A model generated the notes under the pieces. It was not told where the DNA came from and searched no databases. It saw only the letters and a program-made list of their open reading frames with translations. Position numbers and translations under genes: made by a program. 64,000 nucleotides of DNA, from NCBI RefSeq assembly GCF_036321535.1, contig NC_087459.1, forward strand, positions 21,266,001-21,330,000, given 5' to 3'. Positions 1 to 25,085 of this stretch are shown here, piece by piece. How positions within the stretch are numbered: position 1 is the stretch's first letter; every line of letters starts with the position of its first letter. The DNA is from Camelus dromedarius (lineage: Eukaryota).

Positions 1-1626
1 GAGTTGTAGAACTGTCCATCAGGAGGGTCCAGCTTCCGGCAATAAACACCATCTGGGAAGTAGCCTTCATTCACCCAAGTCTGCAGGAAGAGAGGGCAGA
101 GCTAGGGCAGGACTGACAGAGTGGAGAGAGGTAGAGAAGAGGCAAAATGGAGTAGAAAGGAGCTTACCTGCATCTGGGTGCTGGTGAAGGGCCCGTACAG
201 CTCAGCATCCCCCGTGTTCTCCCACTTATATTCCCACATCACATCCGCCAGACCATCTCCGGAAGACTCTGCTTCTAAAATAACAAGCAAAGCCACAGGG
301 GCCTCAAGTGGCCTGCCCCCTGCCCACAACACCCCTCCTTTGCCCTACAATCTTACCTCCTCTCTGGGTAGGGGTTGGGGTCTCCAGCTCGCCCTCTGCC
401 ACTTCTTCAGCAAACATGTCCAGAGAGGGTGGTGGTGTGGGGTCAGGAGGTCCCTGGGTCCGACACCCCAATCCCTTCAGCCGCATAGCCAACCGTTCCC
501 TTGTCTCTTGATATACTCCGAGGTTACCCTGGGCCACCATCTGGTCAGCCAACCCAGAGAGCCGGTCTAGGCGCTGAGGAGAACTGGGCCGCCCCAGCCC
601 CTTGCTGCCCCCTTTGCTTCCTCCTCGGGCCCCTAGACGCCTCAGTGCCCCAGCCACTGTCTCTCTTGGCAACAGCAGCTCCAGAAGGCCCTCCAGGAGG
701 GCTTGGGTGCTCAATGGTGTCTGGCCCAGACTGTCCTCCTCCTCTGAGTCTGATGGTGGGTGCTGATCAGGTGGCCGCTCCCTGATCTTTACCTGTAATG
801 CAAAAATAGGAGAGTTTTATTTCTGACAAACTGTCTCAGGTTCCAGGCCCAACAGCACTTGCCACCTCCAGGCCCAGCCATGCCAACCCCTGGACCTCAC
901 CCAGTCAATGTTGTCCAGCCAGCTGTCTCGGATCTGAGCATCCCGGTTCAGGAAATAGTTGCCATCAGCATCAAAGTGGCCTTCCTCCATCTCCTCCTGC
1001 AGGTTGAAGGGTGTGATCCGCACACCTCCCTCACTGGGGAGCGTGGCTGCTTCCTGACCTGCACCCAAAACACAGGAGTCCCATGCTAGGTGTGCAAAAG
1101 AGACAGGAGCCTCCAGTGCTCCACAACCACAGGAGCATCTATTTATTCCTCTAGTAGAAAGTCAATTCTTGGGTATAACTCACCTTCTACATCCTCTGAG
1201 GCCAGGATGTCATATTTGCTAGACCCTTCATCATCATCATCTTCCTCATCGCTGTCCAAAGAGTGTTTGCCTTTGAAGCGGCTCCCAGGACCCCCTGCCC
1301 CAGCCACAGGATCCACCAACTGTAAGCAGGAGCCAGAAGTCGAGAGAGATGTAGGTTACTGGCTATTAGCCCCAAATATCCTAGGTTCTAGACTCAAACT
1401 GAAAATCTTTCAAACCCATTTCTCACAGCGCATGGAAACGCTAGCCCCTTCCACCCTTTCTTTGTCCCTCCAGGTTTCTCTGCTAGCTTCTAGCTCCTAT
1501 TTTTCTCCCCTCACTCTTCCCCAGAACGCAGGAGTCTGGCCCCCTCACCTTCTTCTTGGGGACGCTGATTTCATCCTCATCATCCTCATCTCCCACGCCT
1601 TGGAAGGTCACTTTCCTCTTTGGCAT
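1..1626 (-). CDS. CD2BP2: CD2 cytoplasmic tail-binding protein 2 (U5-52K, GYF domain); 3' end truncated by window edge
   Basis: Coding exons (minus): 1626-1549 ([26 protein letters not shown]), 1319-1184, 1058-901 ([22 protein letters not shown]...DSWLDNIDW), 792-357, 274-168 ([26 protein letters not shown]), 80-<1 ([21 protein letters not shown] domain). All introns GT-AG with matching phases. A probable non-coding exon 1 ends at the donor at 2187/2186. Confidence 0.97.
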
Positions 1627-1849
1627 GACTGGATAGAGGGGCCTTCCCCAAGCTGAGCCGAGGGAAAGGGTGAAGATTAGGGGAACTTGGTGAGCACAAT
1701 ACTCACCGCGAGAGGGCTCCCTGCACAACAAATCTTTCACCTGATCGTTACTAGATCTAGTTAGGGACAGGAGGGAACACAGAATCAAGGGCCATAAGGG
1801 GAGCTGGCAGCCAGGAGGCACCAGTCTGGCATCCGGAAGAGTTGCAGTT

Positions 1850-2600
1850 GCGGGGACGGAGAGGCGAACGCGCGGAGGAGCTCCCCATGGGCACTCCCAC
1901 CCTGAACGAAAGATGGGTTCCTCCACGTGACCACCCCCATTCCCGGACCCCGCAGTCCTGGGAGCGAAGGTGCTCCGCGGGCTGACACCCGCTCCACCAC
2001 CCCCAGCTTCCTGGAAGTCTGTGGGGCCCTGGCAGGCCCAGGACCTGGCGCCCCGGCAGCCCCGCTCCTCCCTGCGCCGAACTCCAACTCCGCTGGGTGA
2101 CCCCCCCCAACTGTCTTGGGCTGTGTACAAATTCGAGAGGCGGCAGAGCCCCGGGGACTCCAGCAGTCCCACCGGCGCGCGCTCACCTAAGGATCCAGGG
2201 AAGGCGGGGGAAGAAAGGGAGAGAGGCTTTCGCCAGGGCTACATCCGGGGCACTCAGCCGCCATCACCCGGAAGAGAACTGCGGCAGGCTCCAGGGAAGG
2301 CCGGAAGTGGCTTCGCTTGGGTTAGAGCTAAGACTAACTGCGGGAACAAGCGGAAATACGCACTGAGTGGGGAAAGACACACCCACACCCACACCCCCCG
2401 CAGAAGTGACGTGAGCCGTGTGGGGCGACAATGGCGAGAAGACGGGACGTATTAACGCCTAGACCCTGATCGGACGAGGACGGCCGGAAGTGGTCTCGAT
2501 TCCCTCCTACAGCAGTAGAGGCTGAGGAGAAAGTGGGGGGCACTCTACTTAAAGGGGAGCCCAGGATCACGATGGAGAAGCAAAGTCCCAGCAGGGTCAG
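1850..2600. promoter_or_regulatory. CpG-island, probably bidirectional promoter of CD2BP2
   Basis: CpG-rich. ETS/GABPA CCGGAAGT motifs near 2302 and 2484, GTGACGT near 2406 and a YY1-like ATGGCG near 2431. Confidence 0.75.
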
Positions 2601-3288
2601 TGGGTTGCTGCCCTAGTTTCCCTTTCCCGGGCTGAGTCGCCTTTTCCCCAGGGCTGGCTCTGCACCCATCACCATCTCATTAGAAACCCTGCCTTCCCAC
2701 TGTAAGCGTCCAGTTGCCCGCTGTCTCCTAGTCTGAGGTGTGGCCTTGCTCTTGTCCCAGAGGGGATGCTCGGTTCTCCTGGTGGCTCTTGGGACACCTT
2801 CTGAACCCAGCTCCTTTTAGGACCCAGGGGAAGTCATTTACCCTACGCCTATTCCCTGCGTTAAGTTCCTGGTTTCTGAGGTGGTTAAGAGCCGTAACAG
2901 GAGAGGTGGCAGTGTGACCTGTGCCCAGTACCGAAGTCCCAGAAGTCCCTTTGCCTTCATCTCAGGTAGGCCTGGGAAAGGGCAGCAGTGAATACCCAGA
3001 CTCCCCCCTCCCCCCAAGCAGGACCCTAGCCAAGTGGCCCCTACCCAGGTTTTATAATCTGGCCCAAGGGGAAGAGCTGGGTTTGGGAGGTTAGGAGGGT
3101 TAGGTTCAGTGTTGTGCGGACAAGACCTCTACCTCTTGAGGATACTGAGTCTGAATCCCAGTAGGCCAAGGCTGTGCCCAGAAAGACCCAACTAAAGCCT
3201 GAGAAGGGCAGCATGGGGGGCCCCAGCATAACCGGATGGACCACCCCTCCTCTCTCTTGCCCCTAGTTTCCTCCCAGATTGGACTACT

Positions 3289-3887
3289 ATGAAGCAAAAT
3301 CCGTGCTGTTTCTTCTGTGGGTACAAAACACAGGATCCAGACCGGTAGGGCATCCTGCTAAAGGGGGCCTGAAATACCACCTACCAACACCACTGGTTCA
3401 TCCTCTGGGGAAACCTCTTTACCTGGAACACCAGGCAGACCACATGCCCCTGAGCCTCATCCTGTTAGAGAACTACCAAGTGGAGCCACACCTTGGGGCC
3501 ACAGAACCCCTATGCCTTTACCATCCTGACACCAGGGGTAGAAGGTGGGCAGGCCTACAAGCTGGCAGCAGAAAACCAGGAGCTGGAAGCCTGGCTGTGG
3601 GCACTGGCTAGGGCAAGCTGGAGGTGGCTGGCTGTGCTGCTACGCCCCCTGGAGGCCCAGTACCGGGAGCTGTACCAGGGAGCTGGCCAAGATCACCCCC
3701 AGAGGACTGTGACTTCCCAGCCACCTTCAGTCCCCTCTCCAGCTTCCAGGAGTTGCATGAGCACTTTGGGAAGGAGATCCAGGTGCTGCAGGCAGTGCAA
3801 AGAGGGCTCCAAGAGGCCAGTGACAATGGAGGCAGCAGATCCCAGGCAGAGGTGGAGCTCAATCATTACCTGTTGATAAGTGACTGA
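3289..3887 (+). pseudogene. Disabled Sesquipedalian/PHETA (FAM109)-like PH-domain gene
   Basis: Stitched translation: MKQNPCCFFCGYKTQDPDR*GILLKGA*NTTYQHHWFILWGNL/YLEHQADHMPLSLILLENYQVEPHLGATEP/YAFTILTPGVEGGQAYKLAAENQELEAWLWALARASWRWLAVLLRPLEAQYREL.../SSFQELHEHFGKEIQVL. This is colinear with recalled PHETA1 (MKLN...GFLYKKG...YHRRWFVLRGNMLFYFE...PVGVIILEG...FAF...YVLAAESQ...EGWVKALSRAS...LEQQ...FARLHECYGQEIRAL). Stops TAG 3346-3348 and TGA 3370-3372; frameshifts at about 3418, 3510 and 3700. Confidence 0.85.
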
Positions 3888-4931
3888 GAGATGGATCAAA
3901 GGCCAAAAGGTACCTACTGGCCAAGACCAGCTGACCGCTTCAACAGACACCCAGATCCTGGCTGGCTCTATCACTCCCTCCCTCCTAGTACTTACTCTAA
4001 CCCCCTTCATCAAATAACAAGGCAGGAGACGGACCCAGGTACAACAGCAGGTTCTTTTCCGGTTCCTCAAAGCGCTGTACGGGGTGGGGGCAGAGACAGA
4101 AGAAAATGTAAACACTGGGTTCCACCCCCTGGAGCTCAAGGGAAGACCCCTTACCCAGGTACGGGCTGGAGGGTTGGAAGGGAACAAGGTAAAAGGTGGG
4201 GGTTCTGGTGAGACAAAGCAGGGGAGGCCTGAGAATACAGAGAAAGGTAGATGAAGAGGAAGGAGAGCAAGGAGGGTGGTGGTGGGGAAGAGGGGGACAT
4301 TTCCTGTTCCAGTGCATGTCCCCTTAAATAAACTAGAGTGCAAGAACATTGTGGAGGGAGAACCAAAGGACAGAAGATAGAGTGAACACCCCCACCCTGG
4401 GCTGACCAGGTCTTCTGTACATAATTACAACACAGAGATGTCCAGAAGTAGAGCAAGAAGAGTCTTGGCCCCCAGCCAGGAAGTGGGGGAGATAGGCAAG
4501 ACTCAAGAAGGGAAAAAGGAACCCAGCTCCACTTCATGGGTAAGGGGAGTGACTGGAGTGTAAGAATCTGAAAACCGCTGACTCCCATCGCCAAGAGTCA
4601 CCCCTGTGGTGACAAAAGGCCAGTCAGGACAGCACCTGGGAAGGGACCCCAGAAGGAATTGGGGCAGAAGTGACAGAGACCCCAGCTGGGCTTAACTAGA
4701 GGTGAGGGGCTCCAGATTTGCTCACTGCTGCCCCAGGGAAATGCAGCTGCCCTGTGTACTCTGACTGTCCTGGCTGTGTAGGGATCAGCAGCTGGCAAGG
4801 AAATGGGGAATCAAGCCACTTTCCTCAGAAAGAGGGACACCTGCCAAGGGGGTTGGGAGCAACACCCCAGGCCAGGCCTGCTCTTGGCTGAGGGAAAAAG
4901 GGGGCCATGCAGTCCAGCCCCAGGGCAGAGG

Positions 4932-7900
4932 TCAGAAGTAAGCATCCTGCCGGGCCTCTGATGCTGACGACCTGTCCCCGCCGTCCTGGGGGGCAGGGGG
5001 CCCATCTGCTTTCCGACGCAGCGAGAGCTTCTTGCCTTGGGCCTTCTTCTCCTGCTTCTGCCGCTCCTTCTCCTGCTTCTGCTGCTCCTTCTCTTGCTTC
5101 TGCCGTTCCTTCTCCTGCTTCTCCCGCTCTTTCTCCTGTTTCTGCCGCTCCTTCTCACGTTCCTTTTCCTGTTTTTGCCGTTCTTTCTCCTGCCTGCGGG
5201 TCTCCTTGCTGGGAGCCAGTGGGGTGCTGTTGCCAGTAGGTGAAGGAAGAGATGGACGCAGTCCCTCAGCGGTGACCACAGGCCCTGGGGCAGGCCCAGC
5301 ACTGGCCCTGCGGGCAGGAGGGGGTGGGGAGGGGGCGCCTCCAGCGGCCCGGGAGCCTCGGCTCTTGAGGCCAGGGAGGCTAAGGAGGCTGGAGGAAGGG
5401 CCCAGGGGTGGCTGCTGCCGACGTCGCTCCTCATGGATTGCCCGGGAACCATGCAGTCTCCGTGAGGGCCGGTACTGCAGTTCGCCCCGGGTTTCCCGCC
5501 ACTTCTTGAGCTGGGCTGTGTTCTCTCGCTCAATCAGTGCTTCTGTCACTGGGAGGTTGGTCACCTAGACAGAGAAGAAACAGGTACTAAAATGAAAATG
5601 GGGATGGCGATGGGGATGGGCTGAAGCAGGTGTGAGGTATGCTAAGGCCAGCACCTACCTCATGCACCAGGAAGTCCTCCTGCATGCACTGTTGGGGCAG
5701 GTTGCGCAGCTGCTCCATGGTTTCATACATGCCTTGGCAGGAACGCAGCTTCTCCACTGAGCCCAGCGTGTGCCGCAGCAGCACCAGGGCCACCCGGAAG
5801 ATGATCTTGACACCTGCAGGGTCAAAAAGAAGACAGCCTGGGTGATCAGCCTGGGATCTCAGCCTGTCCCAATCAGGAGGTACACACAGACCCCATCCCT
5901 GTCTACAGCCAACCTTATGGGTGAGAAGACTGAGGACCCAAGAAGCAAAATAAACTGCCATGGGTTTCAGGTTCCTGGGAGGTAGAGCAAACTATGGGCT
6001 GGTGGCAAAGCCAACAAGACCAGGGCTCAGTTTCTCCAGCCCCCAGACTTCTTGTAGTGAAGTGTAGGCCCACCAAGTACCTTCTGTCAGCGGGCTACCC
6101 TCTCTCTGGCAGCCACCATGGAATCCCCAGCCCCCTCAAGGCCCAAATGGCTACAGAATCACCTTCACAGAAGAACATATCCCAGACACGCAGCACTGAA
6201 GCCCAGGGCAGGGTGCGGGCGAAGATGCACATGAACCATTCTGTCATGTAGAGCACAGGGTCAATGCGCTGCCGTCGCAGGTGCCGATGTGCCAGCGGGG
6301 AGGCCCGGCGCAACAGTGCAAAAAAGATTTCTCCATCCAGCTGAATGGCCTCCTGGAGGTGGGACGAGCCATCAGGTGAGGCCTGCTGTGGCCCCCCCTT
6401 GGGGTAGAACTAGTCTTGGGGTAGGGGATCCTCACCTCAGTGGGAGAGGTCCAGAGCAGAGGGACAGAGTGGCACAGGGTGAGGCAGGACAAGGACCACT
6501 CTGCAGCCTTAGGGAAAAGTCACAGCCCCAACTGCACCCAGCCTTCAGACACTTACCAGCCCTGCACTATAGTAACCGGGGAGGTACTTGTCACAGATCT
6601 GCACCAGGCACCAAAAGGCTTGCTGGGAAGGGCAGGAACAAGGAGAGAGGGATGGAGCCTGAGAAACAGGGAGCAGGAAGCTCCCCCATCACCACTGCAG
6701 GCCAAGATCCTCCCAGCCCCTCCCCAACCAGGACCAGCATCTGCTGACCTCAGCAGGCATGTGCATGAGCAGCACTGCAGCCACGGGGGCCTGGGCCTGG
6801 CAGTAGCCCTCATCCGGCCGGTAGATAGTGTAGGCCTTCAGGATTCGATACAGGTCCTGTTGCCTATGGATATTGAGAAAGACCATGAAGGCAATCACAG
6901 GAGTTGGGAGCTCTCTGCCCCAAATAAACCCACCCCCACCAACCACATCAAGAGCTGCCCTATGATTGTGTTCCAGATCAACCTCACACCTTGACCATCA
7001 CACCACACACCTCCATCCAGCTTCCTAATCCTGCCTATCAAGTTTAAGCCAAAGACTCAGACTATAATATAAGCTTTATTCCAGGCTCCAGACTTCCACC
7101 CTTGCCTGCACACCCACGTGCTCCCTACCCATTCCCCAGCACAGACTGTGCTCTCTCTCCATCTGCCACCATCCTATAAACCCTCAAGGTCACCTTCTTC
7201 AGGAAGCTTTCAACAGTGCAGCACCAGCCTGCCTCCAGCACTGTCTGAATGTTTTTACCACCCCAGAGCAGGAGCTCCCCCAGGGCATGGCCTGCCTTAT
7301 CTGTCTCACTGGATTTCATCAGTTCCCCCAGGGCAGGGCCCTGGTTTTTGGTGAATGCTTGGGAAACCAGCTATGCCTCAGACCTTTCTCTTGTCTCTGC
7401 ATCCAAAATAAACTGCCCTAGACCTCTTCCTCTTCCTTGAGGGTGCCCCACTGCTGTGCATGGGAATTCCATCCACTCAGCCCCACGTCAGAAAACAGAG
7501 AGCCTTCCATCACTCCCCACAGCTAATCAAGTGTTATCAACACCACATTCTGAATTTCATTCATCTCTATTCCCTATCTCCACCTCCCAGCCAGTGAGCA
7601 GCTCAGACCTTCATCTCTTACCCAGGAAAATGTAATAACATCCCAAATCCTCTCCCTGCCTCCAGTCACCCACTCATGACCACTGCTTACAATAGTGTTT
7701 CCCAAAATTGTCATTGAAGTGTGATCTTCATTTGTGGTATATCTGCATGCCACCCCTACTATTATCTACTTAATTTTTTTTCTCCAGTCTGCAATAGCAT
7801 CCTTGAAATGACAGGTTTGATAATACTAGTTATCTTACCTAATGCATATTAAAATAAACATGTAACTTCCCATGCTACATTCACCTACCAGATTGTCTCT

Positions 7901-10900
7901 GTGCCACCACCTTCTCCCCTGTTGCTGTGGGTGAACTATCTGTGATCCTGGCCAACCACAGCCTTTCCACTTGGGCACTGCATCCCATCTCCTAACCTAC
8001 ACAGGCCATCCCTCCAGCAACCTTCCCATCACTCGTGTATCATCAATTTTTCTCAATCTACTAGATCGTTCCTGTTGGCATACCAACATCTGTCATTTCC
8101 TCCAGCTTAAAAAACAAAACAAAACAAAAACCTCCCTTTATCCTATTTCCCCTCCAAATATCACACCATTTCTTTCCTACCTATTCAGTAAAAAAAAAAA
8201 AAAAAAAAAACCCAGAGTACAGACCTGCTATCTTCAATTTCTTTCCTTCCATTCTTCAATCAGGTTTTAACCCACTGCTCTACACAAAACTGCTTTTATC
8301 AATGTCACCAATGACCCTCACATTCCTAAATCTAGAGATCGATTTGCAGACTTGACTTTACTTGACCCATCAGCAACATTTCCTACAGCTGATCCTGAAA
8401 CCACTCTTGATTTTGCTTCTAGGAATCATACTCTCCTGGTTCTCCTCATACCTCACCAGCTTCTCCTGCTAGTCCTTCTCCTTTACTGGTTCTTTCTCAT
8501 CTTCCCCTTCTTGAAATGTTGGAGCTGCAGGGCTCAATCTTTGAACAGCTTCCTTTCATAGCTATACCTGCTGCCTTAATGACCTCATCCAGACCGATGG
8601 GGGAGATTTAGTCCCACGTAAAGGCTGACAACTTTAAATTTCCAAATTATTTCCAGTTTAAACCTCTAACCGAAATCCAAACTTATATAATACTGGACAT
8701 CCAGTTTACTTGGCATCTCCATCTGTATGTCCAAGAAGTATTTCAAACTTCACATTCCAAAAATGAGCTCCTGATACATCCTCAAATCTACTTTTCCCCC
8801 AGTTTTCCCCATCCATATCAGTATATTGCAACTCCATTCTTCTAGTTTTCTAAGAAAAATGTCGAAAAACATTAAGAGTCTTCCGTAACTACTCTCATAC
8901 ACACTCCATGTCTAATCCACTGGTAAATCCTTTAGGCTCTACCTTCAAAACATATCCAGACTCCAACCACTTCTCCCCATCACCCCACTGCTATCATCCT
9001 GGTCTGTCTGTCATCGTCTCTATCCTGGATTATGAAAACAGTCTCCTAAATGGTCTCTCTGCTTCTACCTTTGTCTCCTATGGTCTGTCCTCAGCACAGC
9101 AACCAGAACGATCCTTTTAAAACACAAGTCAGATCAAGTCACTTGTAACCCCATCTCTAGTCACATTCTCTATCCCCTTTTCTTGCTTTAAACTCTTCCT
9201 TAATATTTACCATCACTGTACATACAACATACTTTCCTTCTTTATCTTACCTACTGTCTATCACTACTAACTATAATAAGCCCCCTGAGGGCAGGAGTTT
9301 TTGTCTTTTGCTCACCACTATCATCTGTGACTAAAACAGGACCTGGCTGATAGCATGTGCTTGATAAATATCTGCTGAAAGGATGAACTTATTGATAAAA
9401 AAAAAAAGTCCATCCACATGCTCCCTCAAGCTGAGAACCACCTAAAAACATCTTGCACACAGCTATGGAGCAGTATATAGACTTCCTGAGGAAGCCTGGC
9501 ATACAGAACAAAACTCAAGGCTCTTGGCAGAACATTTAAGGGCCTTGGTGATCTGGCCCTAAACTGTTTTTCCAGCCTCAGCTCTACCCAACTCCACTGC
9601 CCAGACACAGCTTACATAACCCTTAAGCCAGGAAAAACCTGGCTCCCATCTACCCTTCCAAACCCAGCTCAAATGCAGCCTCTTCAATGAACCTGTGATG
9701 TGGCTCCCCATCCCCTCACCAGCACCTCCCCCTCATCACTCTGAGTCAGAGTCTCCCTCCTAGGACATTTCCTTCAATATGGCTTGACACACAATCCATT
9801 AAGGACCATTCCTGTGGAAGTCCTAGAAGGCTTTCAACCCAGCCCCTATATCTACCTGGAGCTCTCAACAAATGTTTGCTGACTGACTCAGTCAGGTCAC
9901 CTTACCCATGCCCGCCTCGAGCAGCAAACATCTCGTGGAAAGGGAACTGGCGGTGCAAGTCCTTCTCAATCACATCCAGCCACTTGGGGTCCCCAGGAGC
10001 CCGTTCCAGCTCCTGCAGAGGAACAGCAGCAATTATCTCCAATCTGGAGGAACTAATGACACCCTTCACACAGACAATGTCACAGGTCCCCACACCCTGG
10101 AGCTGTGCACACCTCAAACTTGCCCGGGTTCTGCTCCAGGAGTTCCTTGCTGTTGGACAGGTACTGCCAGGCTTTGGCTCTGAGAGAGGAGGGGATCCCC
10201 TTCCGGCAGCGCAGCTTCACCTACGCAGAGTCCATGCAGGGGAACAGCCTCAGTGGCGGGCACAGCCTCCAAGCTTTCCCCAGCAGTCCTCAGGCTCCCT
10301 GGGACACCCATCCCACATCCCATGGGCTTAACACCATTGGACCTGGCCTGGCCTTCTGTCTTTAGCTACTCTTCCCCCCAAGCCCAAGTACTACCTACCC
10401 CCAACATGGTCCAGAGAGCAGAAACTATCAGGTTCCTGGGCTTCTCCAGAGCACACAGGCCCTCCCTGCCCCCCCCACACACCCTCTGTGTCCGTTGCCC
10501 TGCCCACCACTCAGCCTTCTCAAACCTTCTGGAAACGCCGTGACAGCCACTTATCCCAGTTACTGAACATCTCCAGCCATTTGAGCTCCCGCTGCCGAGC
10601 CACATCCACAGGAATAGAGCTCTCTCTGAGGACATGAGGAGTATGGAAGGGGTCAGTAGTATAAAACCTGGCTTTCTAGGGGAACTGAGGCAAGCCAACT
10701 CCCCAAGTTCAAATGAGAGACCAGAACATAAAAGCATTTTGTGAGCTACCAATACCAAACAGCAGGATGTCTGGCCACTTGGCCATCCAAGGCCCTAATT
10801 CACCATACTGGAAGAAATTCCCTTTGGAAGGAATCTCTGAACAGAGATCGCGTTCTCATGTTGGATCTCTATACAGACACTGTGTTCAAATCCCACTTCT

Positions 10901-13900
10901 GACACATACAAGTTTGGGAAGAGAGTATGGAATATTTAAAAGCTACATTCTGCATTAGACCTGGATCCAAGTTCTAGCTTTACTACTTACTCACTGTGTG
11001 GTCTTGGGCTAGTCACTAAATTCCTCTAAGCCTCAATTTCCTCATTTGTAAGATGCAGAGAAAAACAATATCTACCTAAGAGATTATATGAAATAACACA
11101 AAGCAGGGACACAGTTAAGTGACAGCAATTATTATCCATAAAATAAAATAAAGAACAAATACACTTCCCTGTCTCCTTAGAAGCAACTGTGTGAGTTTCC
11201 TTCTACCAGACTCTAGAGAGCCTTTGGACCATCTGCAATTTCCTCTACCTCCTCCTCCCTGAAATCGCCCCAGATTAACAAACAAAGGAAGCTTTCCTTG
11301 CACTGTTCGCTCACTGTTCTGTCAGAGCTTCGCACTCAAGATACCCCCTCAGTCCTGAAACAGTTACTCGTGGGAGCCAGTACCAGGAAGTGAGTGGAGT
11401 GGAAGAAAGAGCTTGGGTGTCAGACAGACTTAAGCTCAAATCCCAGTTCTGTTCCTTAGAAGTTGGGGAGTCTTGGCAAGTGATAACCTAATTCTCTTTC
11501 CTCTCTGTAAAAAGGAATGCCACCACTTACATCACAAAGTTATGAGAGGACTATTGAGAAACTGCATATAAAGGACTGTTAAATGGGAGGTTTAATGTTA
11601 GTTTCTCTGGTCCTAGAAGCTCCTTAAACAGAAAGATCATTTCTCATTAATCTCTATCATAAGTCAATTTCAAACTCTACTAAAGGCCAGGAAGAGTAAG
11701 ATACCTTTCCCGCCCTTAAAAGGCCACAAGCTAGCAGGGAAGATAACTGCAGTATGGTGAGGGAAATGCAATGACAAGGATGCACAGAAAAGGCACTAAT
11801 TGGAGTACGGGCAATGGATATCAGGGAAAGCTTCCTGGAGGAAGGAACATCTGAGGTAAGCCATGAAGGAGAGTAGAACATACCAGGAAAAGACAGAGAG
11901 AAGGGCATTTCTGGCTGATGGTATAGCCTGAGTATGAAGGGAAAAAGACTTCAATCACTTCGACAGGATCACAGCACATGGTGAGAAGTGGAAAAGAAGA
12001 CCTGAGAGGCAGGCAGAGCCAGATAATAGGAGCCTGTGTTCAGGCTAAAGCACTTGGATTTTATCTGGTGGACAGTAGCCACTAAAAGGTTTTAAGGTAA
12101 CGTGTGCCACAGTCAGCCTTGCCTCAGAAGTAGATTCTGTCAGCATGTAAGATGGATTTTAAAGGACAAAATCACAAAACACAGAATCAGCACCCAGCAC
12201 AGTGCCTGGTACACAAGAGGGGCTCACTAAAATCCAATTCAATCCAAGTTCCTTAGGGCAGCATAGTATTAAGGAGAGTGCTGTTGGTCACAGAGATCCG
12301 AATTATTTGAGTGGGGCAATTCACTCAGTTGCTCTAATCCTGTTTCTTCACCTATTAATTTGACACAATAATGCATCCATCATGCATGGGAAAGCACCAG
12401 AGTCAAATTTCAGTTGCCCACCCCACACAGGACTGTGAATATTGGTGCTCAAAGATTTTACGAATTTCTTGTTGGATTATAAACCCTGCCTAGAATATCC
12501 TCCCACAGGGCTTCCCCCAACACCAGGCAGGCAGGTCCCCCTGATCCCAACACGCAGAGCCATGACTAAATCCTACTCATTCTTCAGATTCATCAGCTCA
12601 GTTGAATTCCCAGACTGGGCAAGATTCCTTCCCTAGGTGTTCACAAAACCCTGTGATGATCTCTAGGCTAAATGTAACATATTATATTGAAACCAACTGT
12701 TTAAGTATTTGTCTCTCCCTCTAGATGATGAGCACCTTGAAACAACCATTCTATCCTTAGTACCCAGCATAGGGCCTGGCACTGGGGGTCTCAGGTGATG
12801 CTGTTAAAGGGGTACAGGAACAATGGGCAGGATCCAAAGAGAGGGAAGGAAGAAGCCAGAAGCAATCACACCCCCACCTTAGGAGTGACTCAGGCCCCTG
12901 GAGGGAACTAGGAAAGAGTAAGCCGGGCTGAGGAGATGAGGAAATGGGGAAGAGGCCTCCCCCACCTCCTTTCCTTCAATGAAAACACAAGACTGCCTTT
13001 CTCTGTTTCACAGAGGGGCCTTGCCTTCAGAGTGTCCCCTCCATCCAGACATCCCCATCTCACCACCCTATCAGACCAAGGGTTATGGGGAAGAGAAGGT
13101 GCCTCCATCCCTCCACACTTTCCCCCTAAGGCACCAAAGATCTCCACCAGAACCCCTGTCCAGCCAGCCCTCCAGAATATCTGGCCTGTGGCTGGAGTTG
13201 CCCATTGAAGAGCTGGGACAACCTAAGATATCATCTCATTCAACTTTTCACCTCATAGAGGAGGAAAGTGAGGCAGGGAAATGAGGAAGACACTAAGTCA
13301 AGGGCACACAACACACCAAAAGCTTAAGCAAGGCTTAGGCTCAGATCCAGAACTCCAGACACCTGGTCTGAAACCCTAACACGCCAGTGCCAAAGAAACC
13401 TCAGGATGCTCTAGGCAAGACAGATTGCTAAGAAGCCCACTCCCACTAATCACCCCCTGGATCCTCAGAAGAGGATGGGCTGCCAGAGTATGGGCAAGAT
13501 GTATCATTTCCTCCTCCCCCAACCTCTGCTTCCCTGAAGCAGTCCTACTGGGTGCCCACTGGGTACTCACAGGCTGCCGGAATACTGGCTGCCCCCCAGG
13601 AAGCCATACTTGTCCGTCTTGCGCAGAGCCAGCCCANNNNNNNNNNNNNNNNNNNNNNNNNNNNNNNNNNNNNNNNNNNNNNNNNNNNNNNNNNNNNNNN
13701 NNNNNNNNNNNNNNNNNNNNNNNNNNNNNNNNNNNNNNNNNNNNNNNNNNNNNNNNNNNNNNNNNNNNNNNNNNNNNNNNNNNNNNNNNNNNNNNNNNNN
13801 GTTTTCAGCAGGCTCTGGAGCTGGGGTCACGGTCACGACAGCTACCAGAGCCTCACATGTCCCTGGAGGGCCTGTTCCAGGCCCTGAGGGGTCCTCTGGA

Positions 13901-14514
13901 GCCTGTCCTGTTGATGCTGATGTTGCTGCTGCAGCTCCATGTCCACTTGTCACCTGTCCTGCTGTCACTGCTGCAACCCGTGAAGTCACTCCTGAGGCCA
14001 CTGTGGTTCCCGACTTGGGGGCAAGCGGGGGTTTGGAGGTCAGGGCCCCAGGAGCCGTTCTGGAAGAGGTCCTGGTGGGGTTCCCGGTAAGGGTACCTGG
14101 TCCAGGCGCGGGTGAGATTCCGGCCTCCTCCGTCTTTGGAGAGTCTGCCCCTGGGGCCAGAGCCTTAGACATCTCGGCTCCTGCCACAGCCTGGGGCGCC
14201 AAGGGCTCTGGACCGGAGACCTGCACCTTCGGGGCTTCGGGTGAGGCCTCCAGAGTCAGCACCACCACCGTGCTGCCTGTGACCATCGGACCCGAGGCCA
14301 AGGCCGAGGCCTGGGTCGGACCCGGTACCCATGCGGGCTGCGCCTCCCCGGGGGCAACCAGAGTGACCGGGGCCGAAATGGCCGTGGTCACTGGCGGCCC
14401 CGGAGCCACCACCACGACGGACCCAGCCCGGGAGCTGCGGGGCGGCGGCGAAGGGGCCGCGGGGGCGCCATGACGGCGCGGCGGGGCCACCAGAGGCGCC
14501 GGGCCGGTCTCCAT
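4932..14514 (-). CDS. TBC1D10B: TBC1 domain family member 10B (Rab-GAP, EPI64B), about 805 aa
   Basis: Exons (minus): 14514-13571 ([16 protein letters not shown]..., contains an N-run), 10625-10526, 10220-10113, 10012-9906 ([19 protein letters not shown]), 6863-6749 ([17 protein letters not shown]), 6622-6557, 6352-6163, 5813-5659, 5564-4932 (ends QDAYF*). Total 2418 nt, phases consistent. Confidence 0.97.
5045..5195 (-). repeat. Coding charged heptad repeat (QEKERQK-like, 7 QEK units) in the TBC1D10B C-terminus
   Basis: Translation [52 protein letters not shown]; roughly 21-nt periodicity in the DNA. Confidence 0.9.
7990..9390 (+). mobile_element. L2 LINE remnant in a TBC1D10B intron (ends approximate)
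   Basis: Pyrimidine-rich L2-like body ending in an L2-type 3' terminus (ggacctggctgatagcatgtgcttgataaatatctgctgaaaggatgaa). Recognised by eye. Confidence 0.6.
10960..11100 (+). mobile_element. MIR SINE remnant
   Basis: MIR core-like sequence: ctgtgtggtcttgggctagtcactaaattcctctaagcctcaatttcctcatttgtaag. Confidence 0.6.
11690..12170 (-). mobile_element. L2 remnant (ends approximate)
   Basis: Purine-rich antisense L2 signature, e.g. cagggaaagcttcctggaggaagg. Confidence 0.5.
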
Positions 14515-18259: not shown

Positions 18260-20352
18260 ATGGTGAGTGAGAATCCCCCAGCCCTTCCCAGATCCCTCAG
18301 ACCTCAGGGCAGCCTCAGCCTTTGGAAGAAAGTAGCTGGTTCCCAGTCAGCAAGAGAAAAAAAAGATGAATCTTCCTTTTCTTGGTATCACTAAGGGGAA
18401 TGTCCAGAATGATACCCTGAAGGACCAAACCAAGAGTAATCTGCCCAGACACTCCACCCACAGGAACCCAGTCCCTCTCAAAGCATGCATCATACCTTCC
18501 TGCACTCCATCTTCCTAAAACCCCCTGGGACCAGCCAGGCAGGGATTCTCACTCCCATTCTATAAATGAGAAAGTAGACGTTCAGACAAGGTGAATGAGT
18601 GGATCAGGGTCACACAGCAAGTCTGTGAGGAGGCAGGCTCAGGGCACTGAGACGGGGAGGTACGTTCCAATTGTTGGCTAGGATGGAAGGATGGAGACCT
18701 GAGGGCTATGGATAGGAATTTGGGATACAACTGAAGCAAGTCCCCTCAGCAAAGAGGTCCTAAGGAAGGGGAAGTCTAGAGCCAGAAGTTACTTTAGAAG
18801 AATGGACTCAAAGAACCCTGAATCTAATCCATTGCCTCCAGAGAGGAGTAGGGATTGGCCCATGAGCCCTTCTGCCCCACCTTAACCCCTCAGGCACCCA
18901 AGAAGGCCAGAAGAAGGGCAGCAGCAGAGGGCGGAAGCTCCAATGTCTTCTCCATGTTCGATCAGACTCAGATCCAGGAGTTCAAGGAGGTAAGTGTGGG
19001 AAGAAAGGAGAATGAAGGCTGATCAAAGGCACCCCCTGCTGCCCCTCCTCCCCCCCCCCCCAGAATGTGCACCTGTTCTGGGGGGAGGGGAAGAGTTTAG
19101 AATTCCTTTTTCCCCTCTCTGCTTGGAGTGTAAGAGTGTGGCTGGCTGGGGGCCCAGAATCTGATCTGCCTGGGGTAAGGATGCTGCAGCCTAGCCATAG
19201 GGATCCTAACCTCCCTACTCCTGCCCTCCACAGGCCTTCACGGTAATCGACCAGAACCGTGATGGCATTATTGACAAGGAAGACCTGCGGGACACCTTCG
19301 CAGCCATGGGTGAGCCTCCTACCCAACCAGCAACCAGTAAAGATTCAAGGCTGCAGAGTCATGGGAATTCAGCAGCCTCGTGTTCCAGCCCTGCTGGATC
19401 CACACTGGGCCTCAGTTTACCCATATGAAAAATGGGTGGGATGATGTGAATTCATGGGAAGCATCATCCTCTGGCCCCAAGACCCCACTCCAGCCCATGC
19501 TTCCCCCATCCTAATCCAGGGCGTCTGAATGTGAAGAATGAGGAGCTAGATGCCATGATGAAGGAAGCTAGCGGACCCATCAACTTCACTGTCTTCCTGA
19601 CCATGTTTGGGGAGAAACTCAAAGGTGAATGAAGTATCCCGGGTCCAAGCCCCCAGCTGTCTCTCCCTAGACCTTTCAGGCACTGACCCCTTAGCAACCC
19701 TTCAGCTTCATGTGCCCTCTGACCCCCAGGTGCTGACCCTGAGGATGTGATCACTGGAGCCTTCAAGGTCCTGGACCCTGAGGGGAAGGGCACCATCAAG
19801 AAGAAATTGTAAGTGACCCCCTCCAGCTGTTCTCACACAGAAAGCATCCTTAAATCCTACAAAGAGTTAGGCATTGCCAGGGATGAGGGAGAAATTAGGA
19901 CTGTGGAAGTGGGCAAGGATTAAATTTTCACAGCACATATAGGGAAGGGCAAAAGGAGGGAGGCCAGAGTGTTTGGGAGACCAATGAGGAATCCAGAGTG
20001 AGCCTGGTTTTCAAGGCGAGACTGGGAGTAGCAATAGGGATGAGATGGGAGGTAGTAGAAAGGCCTCACCAAGCCCAATCTCAACTCCCTGTATGTCGCC
20101 TCTCTCCAGCCTGGAGGAGTTGCTCACCACGCAGTGTGACCGCTTCTCCCAGGAAGAGGTGAGTGGGGGAGGGGCCCAAGAGAAGTCGAGGGATGGGGGA
20201 GGGTGGCCTAAGAACCGGTTGGAGATACCATGACACCTTTTCCCCAGATCAAGAACATGTGGCAGGCCTTCCCCCCTGACGTGGGCGGCAACGTAGATTA
20301 CAAGAACATCTGCTACGTCATCACGCATGGCGACGCCAAGGACCAGGAGTAG
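18260..20352 (+). CDS. MYL11: Myosin regulatory light chain, fast skeletal muscle (MYLPF), 170 aa
   Basis: Exons: 18260-18262 (ATG), 18894-18989 ([32 protein letters not shown]), 19234-19309 (EF-hand [13 protein letters not shown]), 19520-19624, 19730-19808, 20110-20158, 20248-20352 (...[10 protein letters not shown]). AATAAA at 20419-20424. Confidence 0.98.
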
Positions 20353-20946
20353 GGGGTTCTCTTAGGCCTCTGCTGGCCAACGCCTTCCTGCCAGTTCGAC
20401 TCCCCCACCCCGACTCCTAATAAATTGTACTGGTCTTGTTTCTTATCCGCGGCGCCTTCAGTGCATTTGTGCGAGCGGGACTCAGGTGGGAGGCTGGACT
20501 GAAACACTGGCTGGCTCTAAACGAGTACCCAGCAAATGAATGAATAAATAGTGGCCCAGAAGCCTGGGTGGAGCGGTTCCATCCGCTACGCCCGCCACTT
20601 ATTCCCGCTGGGAAAGAGAAGAGGTGCGAAGCCTCAAAGAAACTAAGTTTTTATTGATGTCTCAGCTTCAGTGAAGTGGAGCAGGGTTATGGGGAGTAGG
20701 GGCTGGAAGTGAAGCTCGGGCTCTTTAAGTGGACGGGGCGGGGCCAAGGCGGTGTCGGGGGCGGAGCCAAAGGCGGGGCTACAAACTCCAAGATTGGGAG
20801 AAATTGTTAGCCGGTGAATCCCTTGCAAGGGAGGGCTTTACAGTCCGGGGCTCCGGGATTAGGAGCCAGGCAGCCTGGGGCTCGGGGATCGGACAAGAGA
20901 CGAACTGAAGGCGGAGGTGAGGTAAAGTAGGGCCCCGGCGGGGGCC

Positions 20947-25025: not shown

Positions 25026-25042
25026 TTTTTTTTTTTTTGCAT

Positions 25043-25085
<43 letters not shown>

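What the first reader, a model, noticed from the sequence alone, without database searches (positions are those of the whole stretch)
3289..3887. Hidden, disabled third Sesquipedalian/PHETA (FAM109)-like gene between CD2BP2 and TBC1D10B
Seen in sequence: stitching four frame segments from ATG 3289 gives MK.N...PD..G.L.K...Y..WFIL.GNL.YLE...PLSLILLE...YAF...YKLAAENQ.LEAW..AL.RAS...L...LE.QY...FQELHEHFGKEI. No single ORF-track entry shows it. Lesions are TAG 3346, TGA 3370 and frameshifts at about 3418, 3510 and 3700. Established: PHETA1/2 (Ses1/2, IPIP27A/B) have a PH domain, a coiled coil and a C-terminal F&H motif, bind OCRL/INPP5B, and carry the CDS in one exon; to my knowledge neither maps to this syntenic block. 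Inference: it is too divergent to be a recent retrocopy, so it may be an ancient third paralog that is still intact in other vertebrates and lost (unitary pseudogene) here.
Basis: partly seen in the sequence, partly recalled or inferred. Interest (0 to 1): 0.88.

Follow-up and report, generated by a model that had tools for sequence, protein, structure and literature searches.

The report
Dead third PHETA gene beside CD2BP2
Between CD2BP2 and TBC1D10B lies the broken remnant of a third PHETA/Sesquipedalian endocytic-adaptor gene; it is still intact in many other mammals, reptiles and fish, the papers I could search do not describe it, and it proves to be the true counterpart of zebrafish "pheta2".

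Summary
Window 3289-3887 (+) is a decayed single-exon PHETA-like coding sequence with a PH domain, a helical segment and an F&H motif. Aligned to the intact hippopotamus ortholog, it carries two premature stops (TAG 3346, TGA 3370). It also carries five frame-changing indels (-7 after 3295, -2 after 3307, -4 after 3417, +1 at 3507, -7 after 3692) and three in-frame deletions.

The same gene is intact (about 190-215 aa) in ruminants, hippo, carnivores, moles, shrew, several rodents, tree shrew, armadillo, marsupials, monotremes, turtles and Anolis. It lay between a GYF gene and a RabGAP-TBC gene in all seven tetrapod loci fetched. Intact copies show purifying selection (pairwise dN/dS 0.17-0.39); changes specific to the window lineage look neutral (15 nonsynonymous: 5 synonymous, pN/pS 0.96).

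In a tree the remnant sits with hippo and cattle inside this clade, apart from PHETA1. It is not a retrocopy. Published zebrafish pheta2 primers match the cyprinid gene lying between cd2bp2 and mylpf, so zebrafish "pheta2" is this gene's ortholog.

Other broken copies occur in bonobo, colobines, lemur, a bat and whales. A raw-read check could not be run. No PHETA2 sequence was available for the tree.

The parts
3289..3887 (+). Decayed single-exon coding sequence of the third PHETA/Sesquipedalian paralog (unitary pseudogene); ancestral ATG at 3289, ancestral stop at 3885-3887
   Evidence: Translations; phmmer E 9e-22; 89.5% nucleotide identity to the intact hippo CDS; tree placement
3343..3611 (+). 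Remnant of the PH domain (hippo residues about 22-112). Holds both premature stops, the -4/+1 frameshift pair, and losses of conserved residues: R38H, R39H, G61S, C68Y, R93Q, K28 and L48 deleted
   Evidence: Pfam PH on the orthologs; invariant-column check
3296..3307 (+). Short out-of-frame stretch between a 7-bp deletion (after 3295) and a 2-bp deletion (after 3307); net loss of 3 codons
3346..3348 (+). Premature stop TAG (GAG, Glu, in intact orthologs)
3370..3372 (+). Premature stop TGA (AGA/CGA, Arg, in intact orthologs)
3417..3418 (+). Site of a 4-bp deletion (frameshift) in a CT-rich run that is prone to slippage
   Evidence: independent 3-bp and 6-bp deletions at the same site in two other species' pseudogenes
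3507..3507 (+). 1-bp insertion (an extra C) that returns the reading to the ATG frame
3692..3693 (+). Site of a 7-bp deletion; this frameshift is never compensated, so the C-terminal third is out of frame with the ATG
3744..3779 (+). Letter-perfect coding remnant of the F&H (OCRL/INPP5B-binding) motif, FQELHEHFGKEI, now out of frame
   Evidence: F, H and EI are required for OCRL1 binding in IPIP27A/B (PMC3046058)
2960..2970 (+). Splice-donor-like motif CTCAG|GTAGG, invariant in six species; probable end of a 5' non-coding exon of this gene. A matching acceptor-like CCCCTAG ends at 3266
   Evidence: Alignment A3. Inference only, with no RNA evidence
2400..2960 (.). Conserved region between the CD2BP2 5' end and the pseudogene (about 80% mean column identity with musk deer, hippo and hyena); a candidate shared bidirectional promoter
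   Evidence: Alignment A4; inference
1..2450 (-). CD2BP2 (GYF-domain gene), the upstream head-to-head neighbour; start codon at about 1626
   Evidence: ORFs; collinear with the hippo locus that carries a PF02213 GYF gene
4932..14514 (-). TBC1D10B coding range, the tail-to-tail neighbour; its 3'UTR runs from 4931 toward the pseudogene and its end was not determined
   Evidence: ORFs; RabGAP-TBC neighbour in all orthologous tetrapod loci

Best explanation
Window 3289-3887 is a unitary pseudogene: the orthologous, in-place remnant of a third member of the PHETA/Sesquipedalian (FAM109, IPIP27) family, called 'PHETA3' here for convenience. In species that keep it, the gene encodes a protein of about 190-215 aa from one coding exon. 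That protein has an N-terminal PH domain, a helical (coiled-coil-like) segment and a C-terminal F&H motif. It is therefore predicted to act like PHETA1/2, as an adaptor that brings the 5-phosphatases OCRL and INPP5B to endocytic membranes. The gene is old: it is present beside cd2bp2 and/or mylpf in teleosts, and between CD2BP2 and TBC1D10B in Anolis, platypus and placentals. In this genome's lineage it was inactivated by stops and frameshifts and has since drifted neutrally. The genome is a cetartiodactyl by my tree and a camelid according to unchecked earlier scan notes. No ATG-started ORF remains that could make the PH domain or the F&H peptide. What is shown: homology, synteny, the lesions, selection on intact copies, neutral drift here, and orthology to zebrafish pheta2. 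What is inferred: OCRL binding by the intact protein, the ohnolog origin, and how the locus is still transcribed.
For: Homology: phmmer E 9e-22 for one 68-aa piece, and 89 relatives of the cattle protein. Synteny: GYF(-)/PH(+)/RabGAP-TBC(-) in seven tetrapod loci, with an 8.3-kb collinear alignment to hippo. Fish: Chanos has zf/PH/mylpf, and its EF-hand gene matches the window's MYLPF exons at 18888-20364; Garra has GYF(-)/PH/EF-hand. Lesions: 2 stops, 5 frame-changing indels and 3 in-frame deletions relative to hippo. Selection: intact-intact dN/dS is 0.17-0.39. Lineage-specific pN/pS is 0.96 in the window against 0.17-0.27 in musk deer, hyena, mole and beaver. One invariant residue is replaced and one deleted, and five nearly invariant residues are lost. 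Tree: the window groups with hippo and cattle at 98/91, mammalian PHETA3 at 100/99, and PHETA1 separately at 100/99. Divergence: PHETA3 against PHETA1 is only 43% identical over 149 aa. Function: Pfam PH at E 1e-14 to 1e-18; the AF2 model shows a PH fold plus helices 117-137 and 161-187, and its top matches are Ses1/Ses2; F161, L164 and H165 are invariant. Reality of the sequence: 20 DNA or unclassified runs from 14 samples hold 0.99-1.00 of the 31-mers.
Against: No raw-read pile-up was obtained, so each lesion rests on assemblies and k-mer shares. The counts behind pN/pS are small (20 changes). The pseudogene is more similar to hippo (89.5%) than the 8-kb regional average (84.7%), and RNA-derived contigs cover 95-98% of 2900-4300 in 14 runs. 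Some non-coding constraint or use therefore cannot be excluded. Only this 64-kb window was visible, so an intact second copy elsewhere in the genome is not excluded. PHETA2 is missing from the tree.
Confidence: 0.9

Rival explanations
1. It is a processed retrocopy of PHETA1 or PHETA2 that landed by chance between CD2BP2 and TBC1D10B and then decayed.
For: PHETA genes carry their CDS in one exon, so a retrocopy would look similar. No PHETA2 sequence was in the tree (one search returned none).
Against: Intact orthologs occupy the same slot from Anolis and platypus to placentals, and beside cd2bp2 and/or mylpf in teleosts. Identity to PHETA1 is only 43%, and 25-26% to Ses2 by structure alignment. 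PHETA1 forms a separate clade at 100/99. The flanks align across species without a poly-A tail or target-site duplication.
Confidence: 0.01
2. The gene is intact in the animal, and the stops and frameshifts are assembly or sequencing errors.
For: GC-rich DNA with short repeats is prone to indel errors. The raw-read check could not be run.
Against: There are ten separate indels plus two stops. Twenty DNA or unclassified runs from 14 samples and 10 studies, including one labelled as a second organism, hold 0.99-1.00 of the sampled 31-mers. Conserved residues are also replaced, and pN/pS is about 1, which errors would not produce.
Confidence: 0.02
3. The coding function is dead, but the locus survives as a transcribed non-coding element. 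It could be a transcript driven by the CD2BP2 bidirectional promoter, or part of, or antisense to, the TBC1D10B 3' end. That use would keep the sequence better conserved than neutral DNA.
For: RNA-derived contigs of 14 runs hold 0.95-0.98 of the words of 2900-4300. The remnant is 89.5% identical to hippo against 84.7% for the surrounding 8 kb. A donor-like motif at 2960-2970 and the upstream promoter region are conserved.
Against: Strand and transcript ends are unknown. No Rfam family matches 1-8000. No canonical minus-strand poly-A signal lies in 2400-4950, and the TATAAA at 3051 is window-specific. Substitutions within the former codons look neutral. The high identity may simply reflect slow rates in the camel and hippo lineages (synonymous change 0.06 and 0.04 per site against 0.15 in musk deer).
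Confidence: 0.25
4. A shortened protein is still made, for example an F&H peptide from the 3' ORFs, and acts as an OCRL-binding micro-protein.
For: The F&H motif coding letters at 3744-3779 are perfectly preserved. ORFs of 87 and 127 aa cover the 3' part.
Against: The frame-3 ORF that contains the motif (3624-3887) starts with GTG and has no ATG. The 127-aa ORF reads the motif region in the wrong frame.
Confidence: 0.02

Closest known systems
PHETA1 (Sesquipedalian-1, FAM109A, IPIP27A)
   Same: Same architecture: N-terminal PH domain, helical segment, and C-terminal F&H motif with F, H and EI; the CDS is in one exon. It is the best structural match of the hippo PHETA3 model (Ses1 of mouse, rat and human at E 1e-13 to 2e-14).
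   Different: Only 43% identical over 149 aa. It forms a separate clade (100/99). It sits at another locus, next to SH2B3, ATXN2 and CUX2 (PMC7272357). PHETA3 proteins lack the PPPxPPRR PACSIN2-binding motif seen in the PHETA1 sequences. Placental PHETA3 is also shorter, at about 200-215 aa.
PHETA2 (Sesquipedalian-2, FAM109B, IPIP27B)
   Same: Same family and architecture; second-best structural matches (cattle, mouse and human Ses2 at E 5e-13 to 3e-12). Cattle have both Ses2 and PHETA3.
   Different: 25-26% identity in the structure alignment. The human locus lies beside NAGA, SMDT1 and NDUFA6 (PMC7272357), not CD2BP2/TBC1D10B. It could not be placed in the tree.
Zebrafish pheta2 (zgc:153733)
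   Same: It is an ortholog of the gene whose remnant lies in the window. The published pheta2 RT-PCR primers (PMC7272357) match the Garra rufa gene P0212 with 0 and 1 mismatches at its start and stop. That gene lies between cd2bp2 (GYF) and mylpf. Teleost genes group with the PHETA3-type clade rather than with PHETA1 (93/88).
   Different: The fish protein is longer (about 280 aa). It keeps a KRSPKLW motif and a C-terminal LIDL(G) motif that placental PHETA3 has lost; platypus and Anolis still end in LLDFG and LIDFG. It is functional in fish: its knockout gives craniofacial defects, and double pheta1/2 mutants also show renal endocytosis and cilia defects (PMC7272357).
Unitary pseudogenes reported elsewhere in this genome by this scan (PARP3, ECI1)
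   Same: Single-copy ancestral genes disabled in place, with intact orthologs elsewhere.
   Different: A different gene family. In this case the loss recurs in several mammalian orders and the parent gene is itself undescribed.

Membership tests
PHETA/Sesquipedalian (FAM109/IPIP27) family | N-terminal PH domain | tested here: met
   Intact orthologs hit PF00169 at E 1e-14 to 1e-18, and the AF2 model has a 7-strand plus helix PH fold matching solved PH domains. The window's short pieces alone give no Pfam hit, but they align residue by residue to the orthologs' PH domain.
PHETA/Sesquipedalian (FAM109/IPIP27) family | Helical or coiled-coil segment after the PH domain | tested here: met
   The AF2 model of hippo PHETA3 has helix 117-137, continuous with the PH C-terminal helix. 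The segment LLRPLEAQYREL is retained in the window. This is a prediction only; dimerisation was not tested.
PHETA/Sesquipedalian (FAM109/IPIP27) family | C-terminal F&H motif (F, H and EI needed for OCRL1 binding; PMC3046058) | tested here: met
   F161, L164 and H165 are invariant and G169 nearly invariant in 36 clade members. The window keeps FQELHEHFGKEI at 3744-3779, but out of frame.
PHETA/Sesquipedalian (FAM109/IPIP27) family | Physical binding to OCRL/INPP5B | not testable with these tools
   Needs pull-down or ITC with an intact PHETA3 protein, for example the cattle one.
PHETA1 orthologs specifically | PPPxPPRR PACSIN2-binding motif and position next to SH2B3/ATXN2 | tested here: not met
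   The motif is present in the PHETA1 sequences and absent from the PHETA3 sequences. The locus here is CD2BP2/TBC1D10B.
Unitary pseudogene | Orthologous position to an intact gene in other species | tested here: met
Unitary pseudogene | Disabling mutations | tested here: met
   2 stops and 5 frame-changing indels.
Unitary pseudogene | Relaxed (neutral) evolution after inactivation | tested here: met
   pN/pS is 0.96 (15 N: 5 S) on the window lineage against 0.17-0.27 in four intact lineages. The counts are small.
Unitary pseudogene | No intact copy elsewhere in the genome | not testable with these tools
   Only the 64-kb window of this genome can be read.
Unitary pseudogene | Lesions confirmed in raw reads | tested here: inconclusive
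Only k-mer shares of 0.99-1.00 in 20 DNA or unclassified runs are available.
Processed retrocopy | Lineage-restricted insertion with no syntenic orthologs, nested inside the parent gene's clade | tested here: not met
   Syntenic orthologs extend to reptiles, monotremes and fish, and the clade is separate from PHETA1.

The most novel reading that the evidence does not exclude
Vertebrates have three, not two, PHETA/Ses adaptor lineages. The third ('PHETA3', between CD2BP2 and TBC1D10B) would be an ancient ohnolog of PHETA1; the 16p11.2-type block carries ATXN2L and SH2B1 just as the PHETA1 block carries ATXN2 and SH2B3. It is a working, selected gene in most vertebrates, including cattle, sheep, a canid (golden jackal), marsupials and fish. 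It has been lost repeatedly and independently in camelids, whales, a bat, lemur, colobines and apes, and possibly in murid rodents. Zebrafish 'pheta2' is its ortholog, so the published zebrafish pheta1/2 double knockout models PHETA1 plus PHETA3, not human PHETA1 plus PHETA2.
Probability: 0.65. Interest if true: 0.65.

Novelty: new member of a known kind. Interest (0 to 1): 0.55.

Why it matters
The OCRL field works with the statement that vertebrates have two PHETA/IPIP27 proteins (PMC3046058). The zebrafish model paper found that pheta2 had no synteny with either human gene and left this unexplained (PMC7272357). This locus explains it. There is a third family member, conserved in position from fish to mammals and under purifying selection. 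It is overlooked probably because the best-studied lineages lack an intact copy: bonobo has only a truncated ORF, and no murid protein appeared among the hits. Three consequences follow. Zebrafish pheta2 phenotypes (craniofacial on its own; renal endocytosis and cilia in double mutants with pheta1) belong to a gene with no intact protein found in bonobo and probably none in other apes. Farm and companion animals may have an extra OCRL adaptor that could buffer OCRL-pathway defects. The repeated losses offer a natural experiment on redundancy among F&H adaptors. For this genome alone, the feature is an ordinary dead gene.

Tried and rejected
Pfam on the separate window pieces gave nothing; the pieces are too short, so this is not evidence against homology.

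Three homolog searches never returned a PHETA2 protein. A cattle PHETA3 query found PHETA3 and fish or invertebrate relatives. A fish, shark and invertebrate profile listed only teleosts. A shark query returned PHETA1 but not PHETA2. The tree therefore lacks PHETA2 and teleost pheta1.

I looked for the TBC1D10B poly-A site to test for antisense overlap. There is no canonical minus-strand signal in 2400-4950, and the TATAAA at 3051 is not conserved, so this is unresolved. Rfam found nothing in 1-8000.

I tested whether two unnamed Logan pseudogene contigs (L011, L012) were close relatives sharing the window's lesions. They are only 81-82% identical and come from other lineages. Their similar indels sit at the same slippage-prone repeats, so they are parallel events and not shared ancestry.

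Literature searches for PHETA3, FAM109C, IPIP27C and 'sesquipedalian-1-like' showed no occurrences in the 20 papers listed. tblastn across frameshifts gave misleading identities, so I replaced it with codon-register alignment.

Full report
**What is in the window**

An ATG at 3289 is followed by MK..., then TAG at 3346 and TGA at 3370. The text ...WFILWGNL follows. The reading switches to frame 3 for YLEHQADHMPLSLILLEN..., back to frame 1 for YAFTILTPG...YKLAAENQELEAW...LEAQYREL, and to frame 3 again for SFQELHEHFGKEI..., ending at TGA 3885-3887. No listed ORF spans these segments.

CD2BP2 exons lie on the minus strand below about 2450, and TBC1D10B lies on the minus strand from 14514 (start) to 4932 (stop).

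**Is it more than chance, and what is it?**

The 68-aa piece 3499-3702 was scored against 1.8 billion representative proteins. Its best hit was a 214-aa protein at E 9e-22 and 78% identity. That cluster holds intact 201-218-aa proteins of cattle, sheep, goat, deer, musk deer and buffalo, named 'sesquipedalian-1-like' by RefSeq.

A search with the cattle protein found intact relatives carrying Pfam PH in many groups:
- hippo, hyena, sea lions, golden jackal, moles and shrew;
- beaver, squirrel, marmot, kangaroo rat, tree shrew and armadillo;
- four marsupials, both monotremes and turtles.
Anolis relatives had already turned up in the first scan.

Direct scans give PF00169 at E 1e-14 to 1e-18. 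An AlphaFold model of the hippo protein (mean pLDDT 75) shows a PH fold followed by long helices. Its best Swiss-Prot structural matches are Sesquipedalian-1 (29-33% identity) and then Sesquipedalian-2 (25-26%). Solved PH domains match the N-terminal half.

**Synteny**

The arrangement GYF gene (-) / PH gene (+) / RabGAP-TBC gene (-) was found in all seven tetrapod loci fetched:
- musk deer, Anolis and platypus;
- hippo, hyena, beaver and mole.

In hippo, hyena, beaver, mole, platypus and Anolis the locus translates exactly to the query from a single exon. The hippo locus aligns to window 1-8120 as one collinear 8.3-kb match at 84.7% identity. The window element is therefore the positional ortholog of an intact gene.

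**Lesions**

Against the hippo CDS (89.5% identity) the window has the following.

| Position | Change | Effect |
|---|---|---|
| after 3295 | 7-bp deletion | frameshift |
| after 3307 | 2-bp deletion | with the previous one, net -9 |
| 3346 | TAG, from GAG | premature stop |
| after 3360 | 3-bp deletion | in frame |
| 3370 | TGA, from an Arg codon | premature stop |
| after 3417 | 4-bp deletion | frameshift |
| 3507 | 1-bp insertion | restores the frame |
| after 3577 | 3-bp deletion | in frame |
| after 3692 | 7-bp deletion | frameshift, never compensated |
| after 3853 | 6-bp deletion | in frame |

The stop codon is at the ancestral place. The alignment to musk deer gives the same picture.

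Of 18 columns invariant across 36 clade members, one is replaced (R93Q) and one deleted (L48). Five nearly invariant residues are also lost: K28, R38H, R39H, G61S and C68Y.

**Selection**

Pairwise Nei-Gojobori dN/dS among seven intact orthologs is 0.17-0.39, so the gene is constrained where it is intact. The window against hippo gives 0.57.

I assigned changes to single lineages by requiring at least four of the five other placentals to agree. The window lineage then has 15 nonsynonymous and 5 synonymous changes (pN/pS 0.96). The comparison values are 0.17 in musk deer, 0.20 in hyena, 0.27 in mole and 0.22 in beaver. Hippo gives 0.53, from only 8 changes. The numbers are small, but they fit neutral drift over most of the lineage-specific branch, which points to an old loss.

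**Phylogeny**

The tree has 57 rows and was built with LG+C20.
- The window read-through, with gaps at the breaks, groups with hippo and cattle (98/91), inside placental PHETA3 (97/89) and mammalian PHETA3 (100/99).
- Reptile, frog, salamander and shark genes join this clade (95/91).
- The two teleost groups (100/99) and lamprey join next (93/88).
- PHETA1 of mammals, lizards and lungfish is a separate clade (100/99).

Hippo PHETA3 against rhinoceros PHETA1 is 43% identical over 149 aa. A 9-bp gap shared only by the window, hippo and musk deer agrees with a cetartiodactyl host. Earlier notes of this scan call the genome a dromedary or camelid. I did not verify that beyond this placement.

**Fish, and the zebrafish link**

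In Chanos one copy lies between a zinc-finger gene and an EF-hand gene. The exons of that EF-hand gene match the window's MYLPF exons (18888-20364) at 68-88% amino-acid identity. The other Chanos copy is also followed by an EF-hand gene. In the cyprinid Garra the gene lies between a GYF gene and a 169-aa EF-hand gene.

Ates et al. 2020 (PMC7272357) reported that zebrafish pheta2 (chr3) 'lacked obvious synteny' with human PHETA1 or PHETA2 and is the more divergent gene. Their pheta2 RT-PCR primers match the Garra gene at its codons 9-17 with 0 mismatches and at its stop with 1 mismatch. Zebrafish pheta2 is therefore an ortholog of the CD2BP2-adjacent gene, the gene that is dead in this window.

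Noakes et al. 2011 state that vertebrates have two versions (PMC3046058). In the full-text search, none of the 20 listed papers contained PHETA3, FAM109C, IPIP27C or 'sesquipedalian-1-like'.

**How it works where intact (inference)**

The F, H and EI residues that IPIP27A/B need for OCRL1 binding are conserved throughout the clade. The intact protein is therefore most likely a PH-domain endocytic adaptor for OCRL/INPP5B. It lacks PHETA1's PPPxPPRR motif. Fish, sharks, salamanders, Anolis and platypus keep a C-terminal L(I/L)D(L/F)G tail that placentals have changed.

**Recurrent loss**

Truncated or frameshifted predictions occur in several other lineages:
- bonobo (a 175-aa 'uncharacterized' ORF lacking the N-terminal half of the PH domain);
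- colobine monkeys (125-158 aa) and lemur;
- a pipistrelle bat and two baleen whales.

Two unnamed Logan contigs carry further independent pseudogenes. They have parallel indels at the same slippage-prone runs.

**Open points**

Twenty DNA or unclassified runs from 14 samples hold 0.99-1.00 of the 31-mers of 2900-4300.
- Fourteen RNA-type runs hold 0.95-0.98 of the same words, so the region is transcribed, but strand and structure are unknown.
- A donor-like CTCAG|GTAGG at 2960-2970 is invariant in six species, and an acceptor-like site ends at 3266. Together they suggest a 5' non-coding exon next to the conserved CD2BP2 promoter region.
- The TBC1D10B 3' end could not be placed.
- PHETA2 is absent from the tree.

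**Verdict**

The feature itself is an ordinary unitary pseudogene. Its parent gene is a third PHETA family member, auto-annotated but undescribed in the papers I could search. Its orthology to zebrafish pheta2 is new and useful to the OCRL/Lowe-syndrome field.

Noticed in passing
window 2960-2970 and 3260-3266: A splice-donor-like CTCAG|GTAGG is invariant in the window, hippo, musk deer, hyena, beaver and mole. It is followed about 300 nt later by a pyrimidine tract and an AG just upstream of the ATG. This is probably a 5' non-coding exon and intron of the PHETA3 gene, still recognisable in the pseudogene.
   Followed up: partly
window 2400-2960: The region between CD2BP2 and the pseudogene is about 80% conserved with three other mammals. 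It contains TGACGTGA (CRE-like) and CCGGAAGTG (ETS-like) motifs, suggesting a bidirectional promoter shared by CD2BP2 and PHETA3, which might keep the dead gene transcribed.
   Followed up: partly
L001:10001-10003 (musk deer) vs window about 2432: The musk deer 'isoform X1' starts at an ATG immediately followed by a GT donor (ATG|GTGAG). The window, hippo and hyena have ATG|GCGAG there, so that upstream start looks specific to musk deer, or is an annotation artefact.
   Followed up: no
window 18888-20364 (+): MYLPF exons, 68-88% identical at the amino-acid level to the milkfish EF-hand gene next to fish pheta. C2H2 zinc-finger arrays at 32.9-34.4 kb and 45.9-46.7 kb match the zinc-finger gene next to it in fish, so block synteny is preserved.
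   Followed up: partly
window about 13650-13830: A run of N inside the first coding exon of TBC1D10B (seen as X in ORFs 13567-14514).
   Followed up: no
P0184 (Salmo trutta): A teleost PHETA3-type PH protein is named 'myosin regulatory light chain 2, skeletal muscle isoform X1' in RefSeq. This looks like an annotation spill-over from the adjacent mylpf gene.
   Followed up: no
C-termini of P0212, P0086, P0085, P0234, P0094, P0031 and the platypus protein (L004): A C-terminal L(I/L)D(L/F)G motif, reminiscent of a clathrin box, is shared by fish, shark, salamander, Anolis and platypus PHETA3-type proteins and by arthropod Ses. It is replaced by CLLSD in placentals, and PHETA1 lacks it. The clathrin-box resemblance is from memory and was not tested.
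   Followed up: no
L011 and L012 (Logan contigs) vs window 3307, 3417, 3577: Independent pseudogenes in two unidentified mammals carry deletions at the same three short-repeat sites as the window (2 bp, 3-6 bp and 3 bp). These are parallel slippage hot spots that could be mistaken for shared lesions.
   Followed up: yes
window 25042-25083 (-): A tandem (AATA)n microsatellite produces a run of overlapping AATAAA matches.
   Followed up: no
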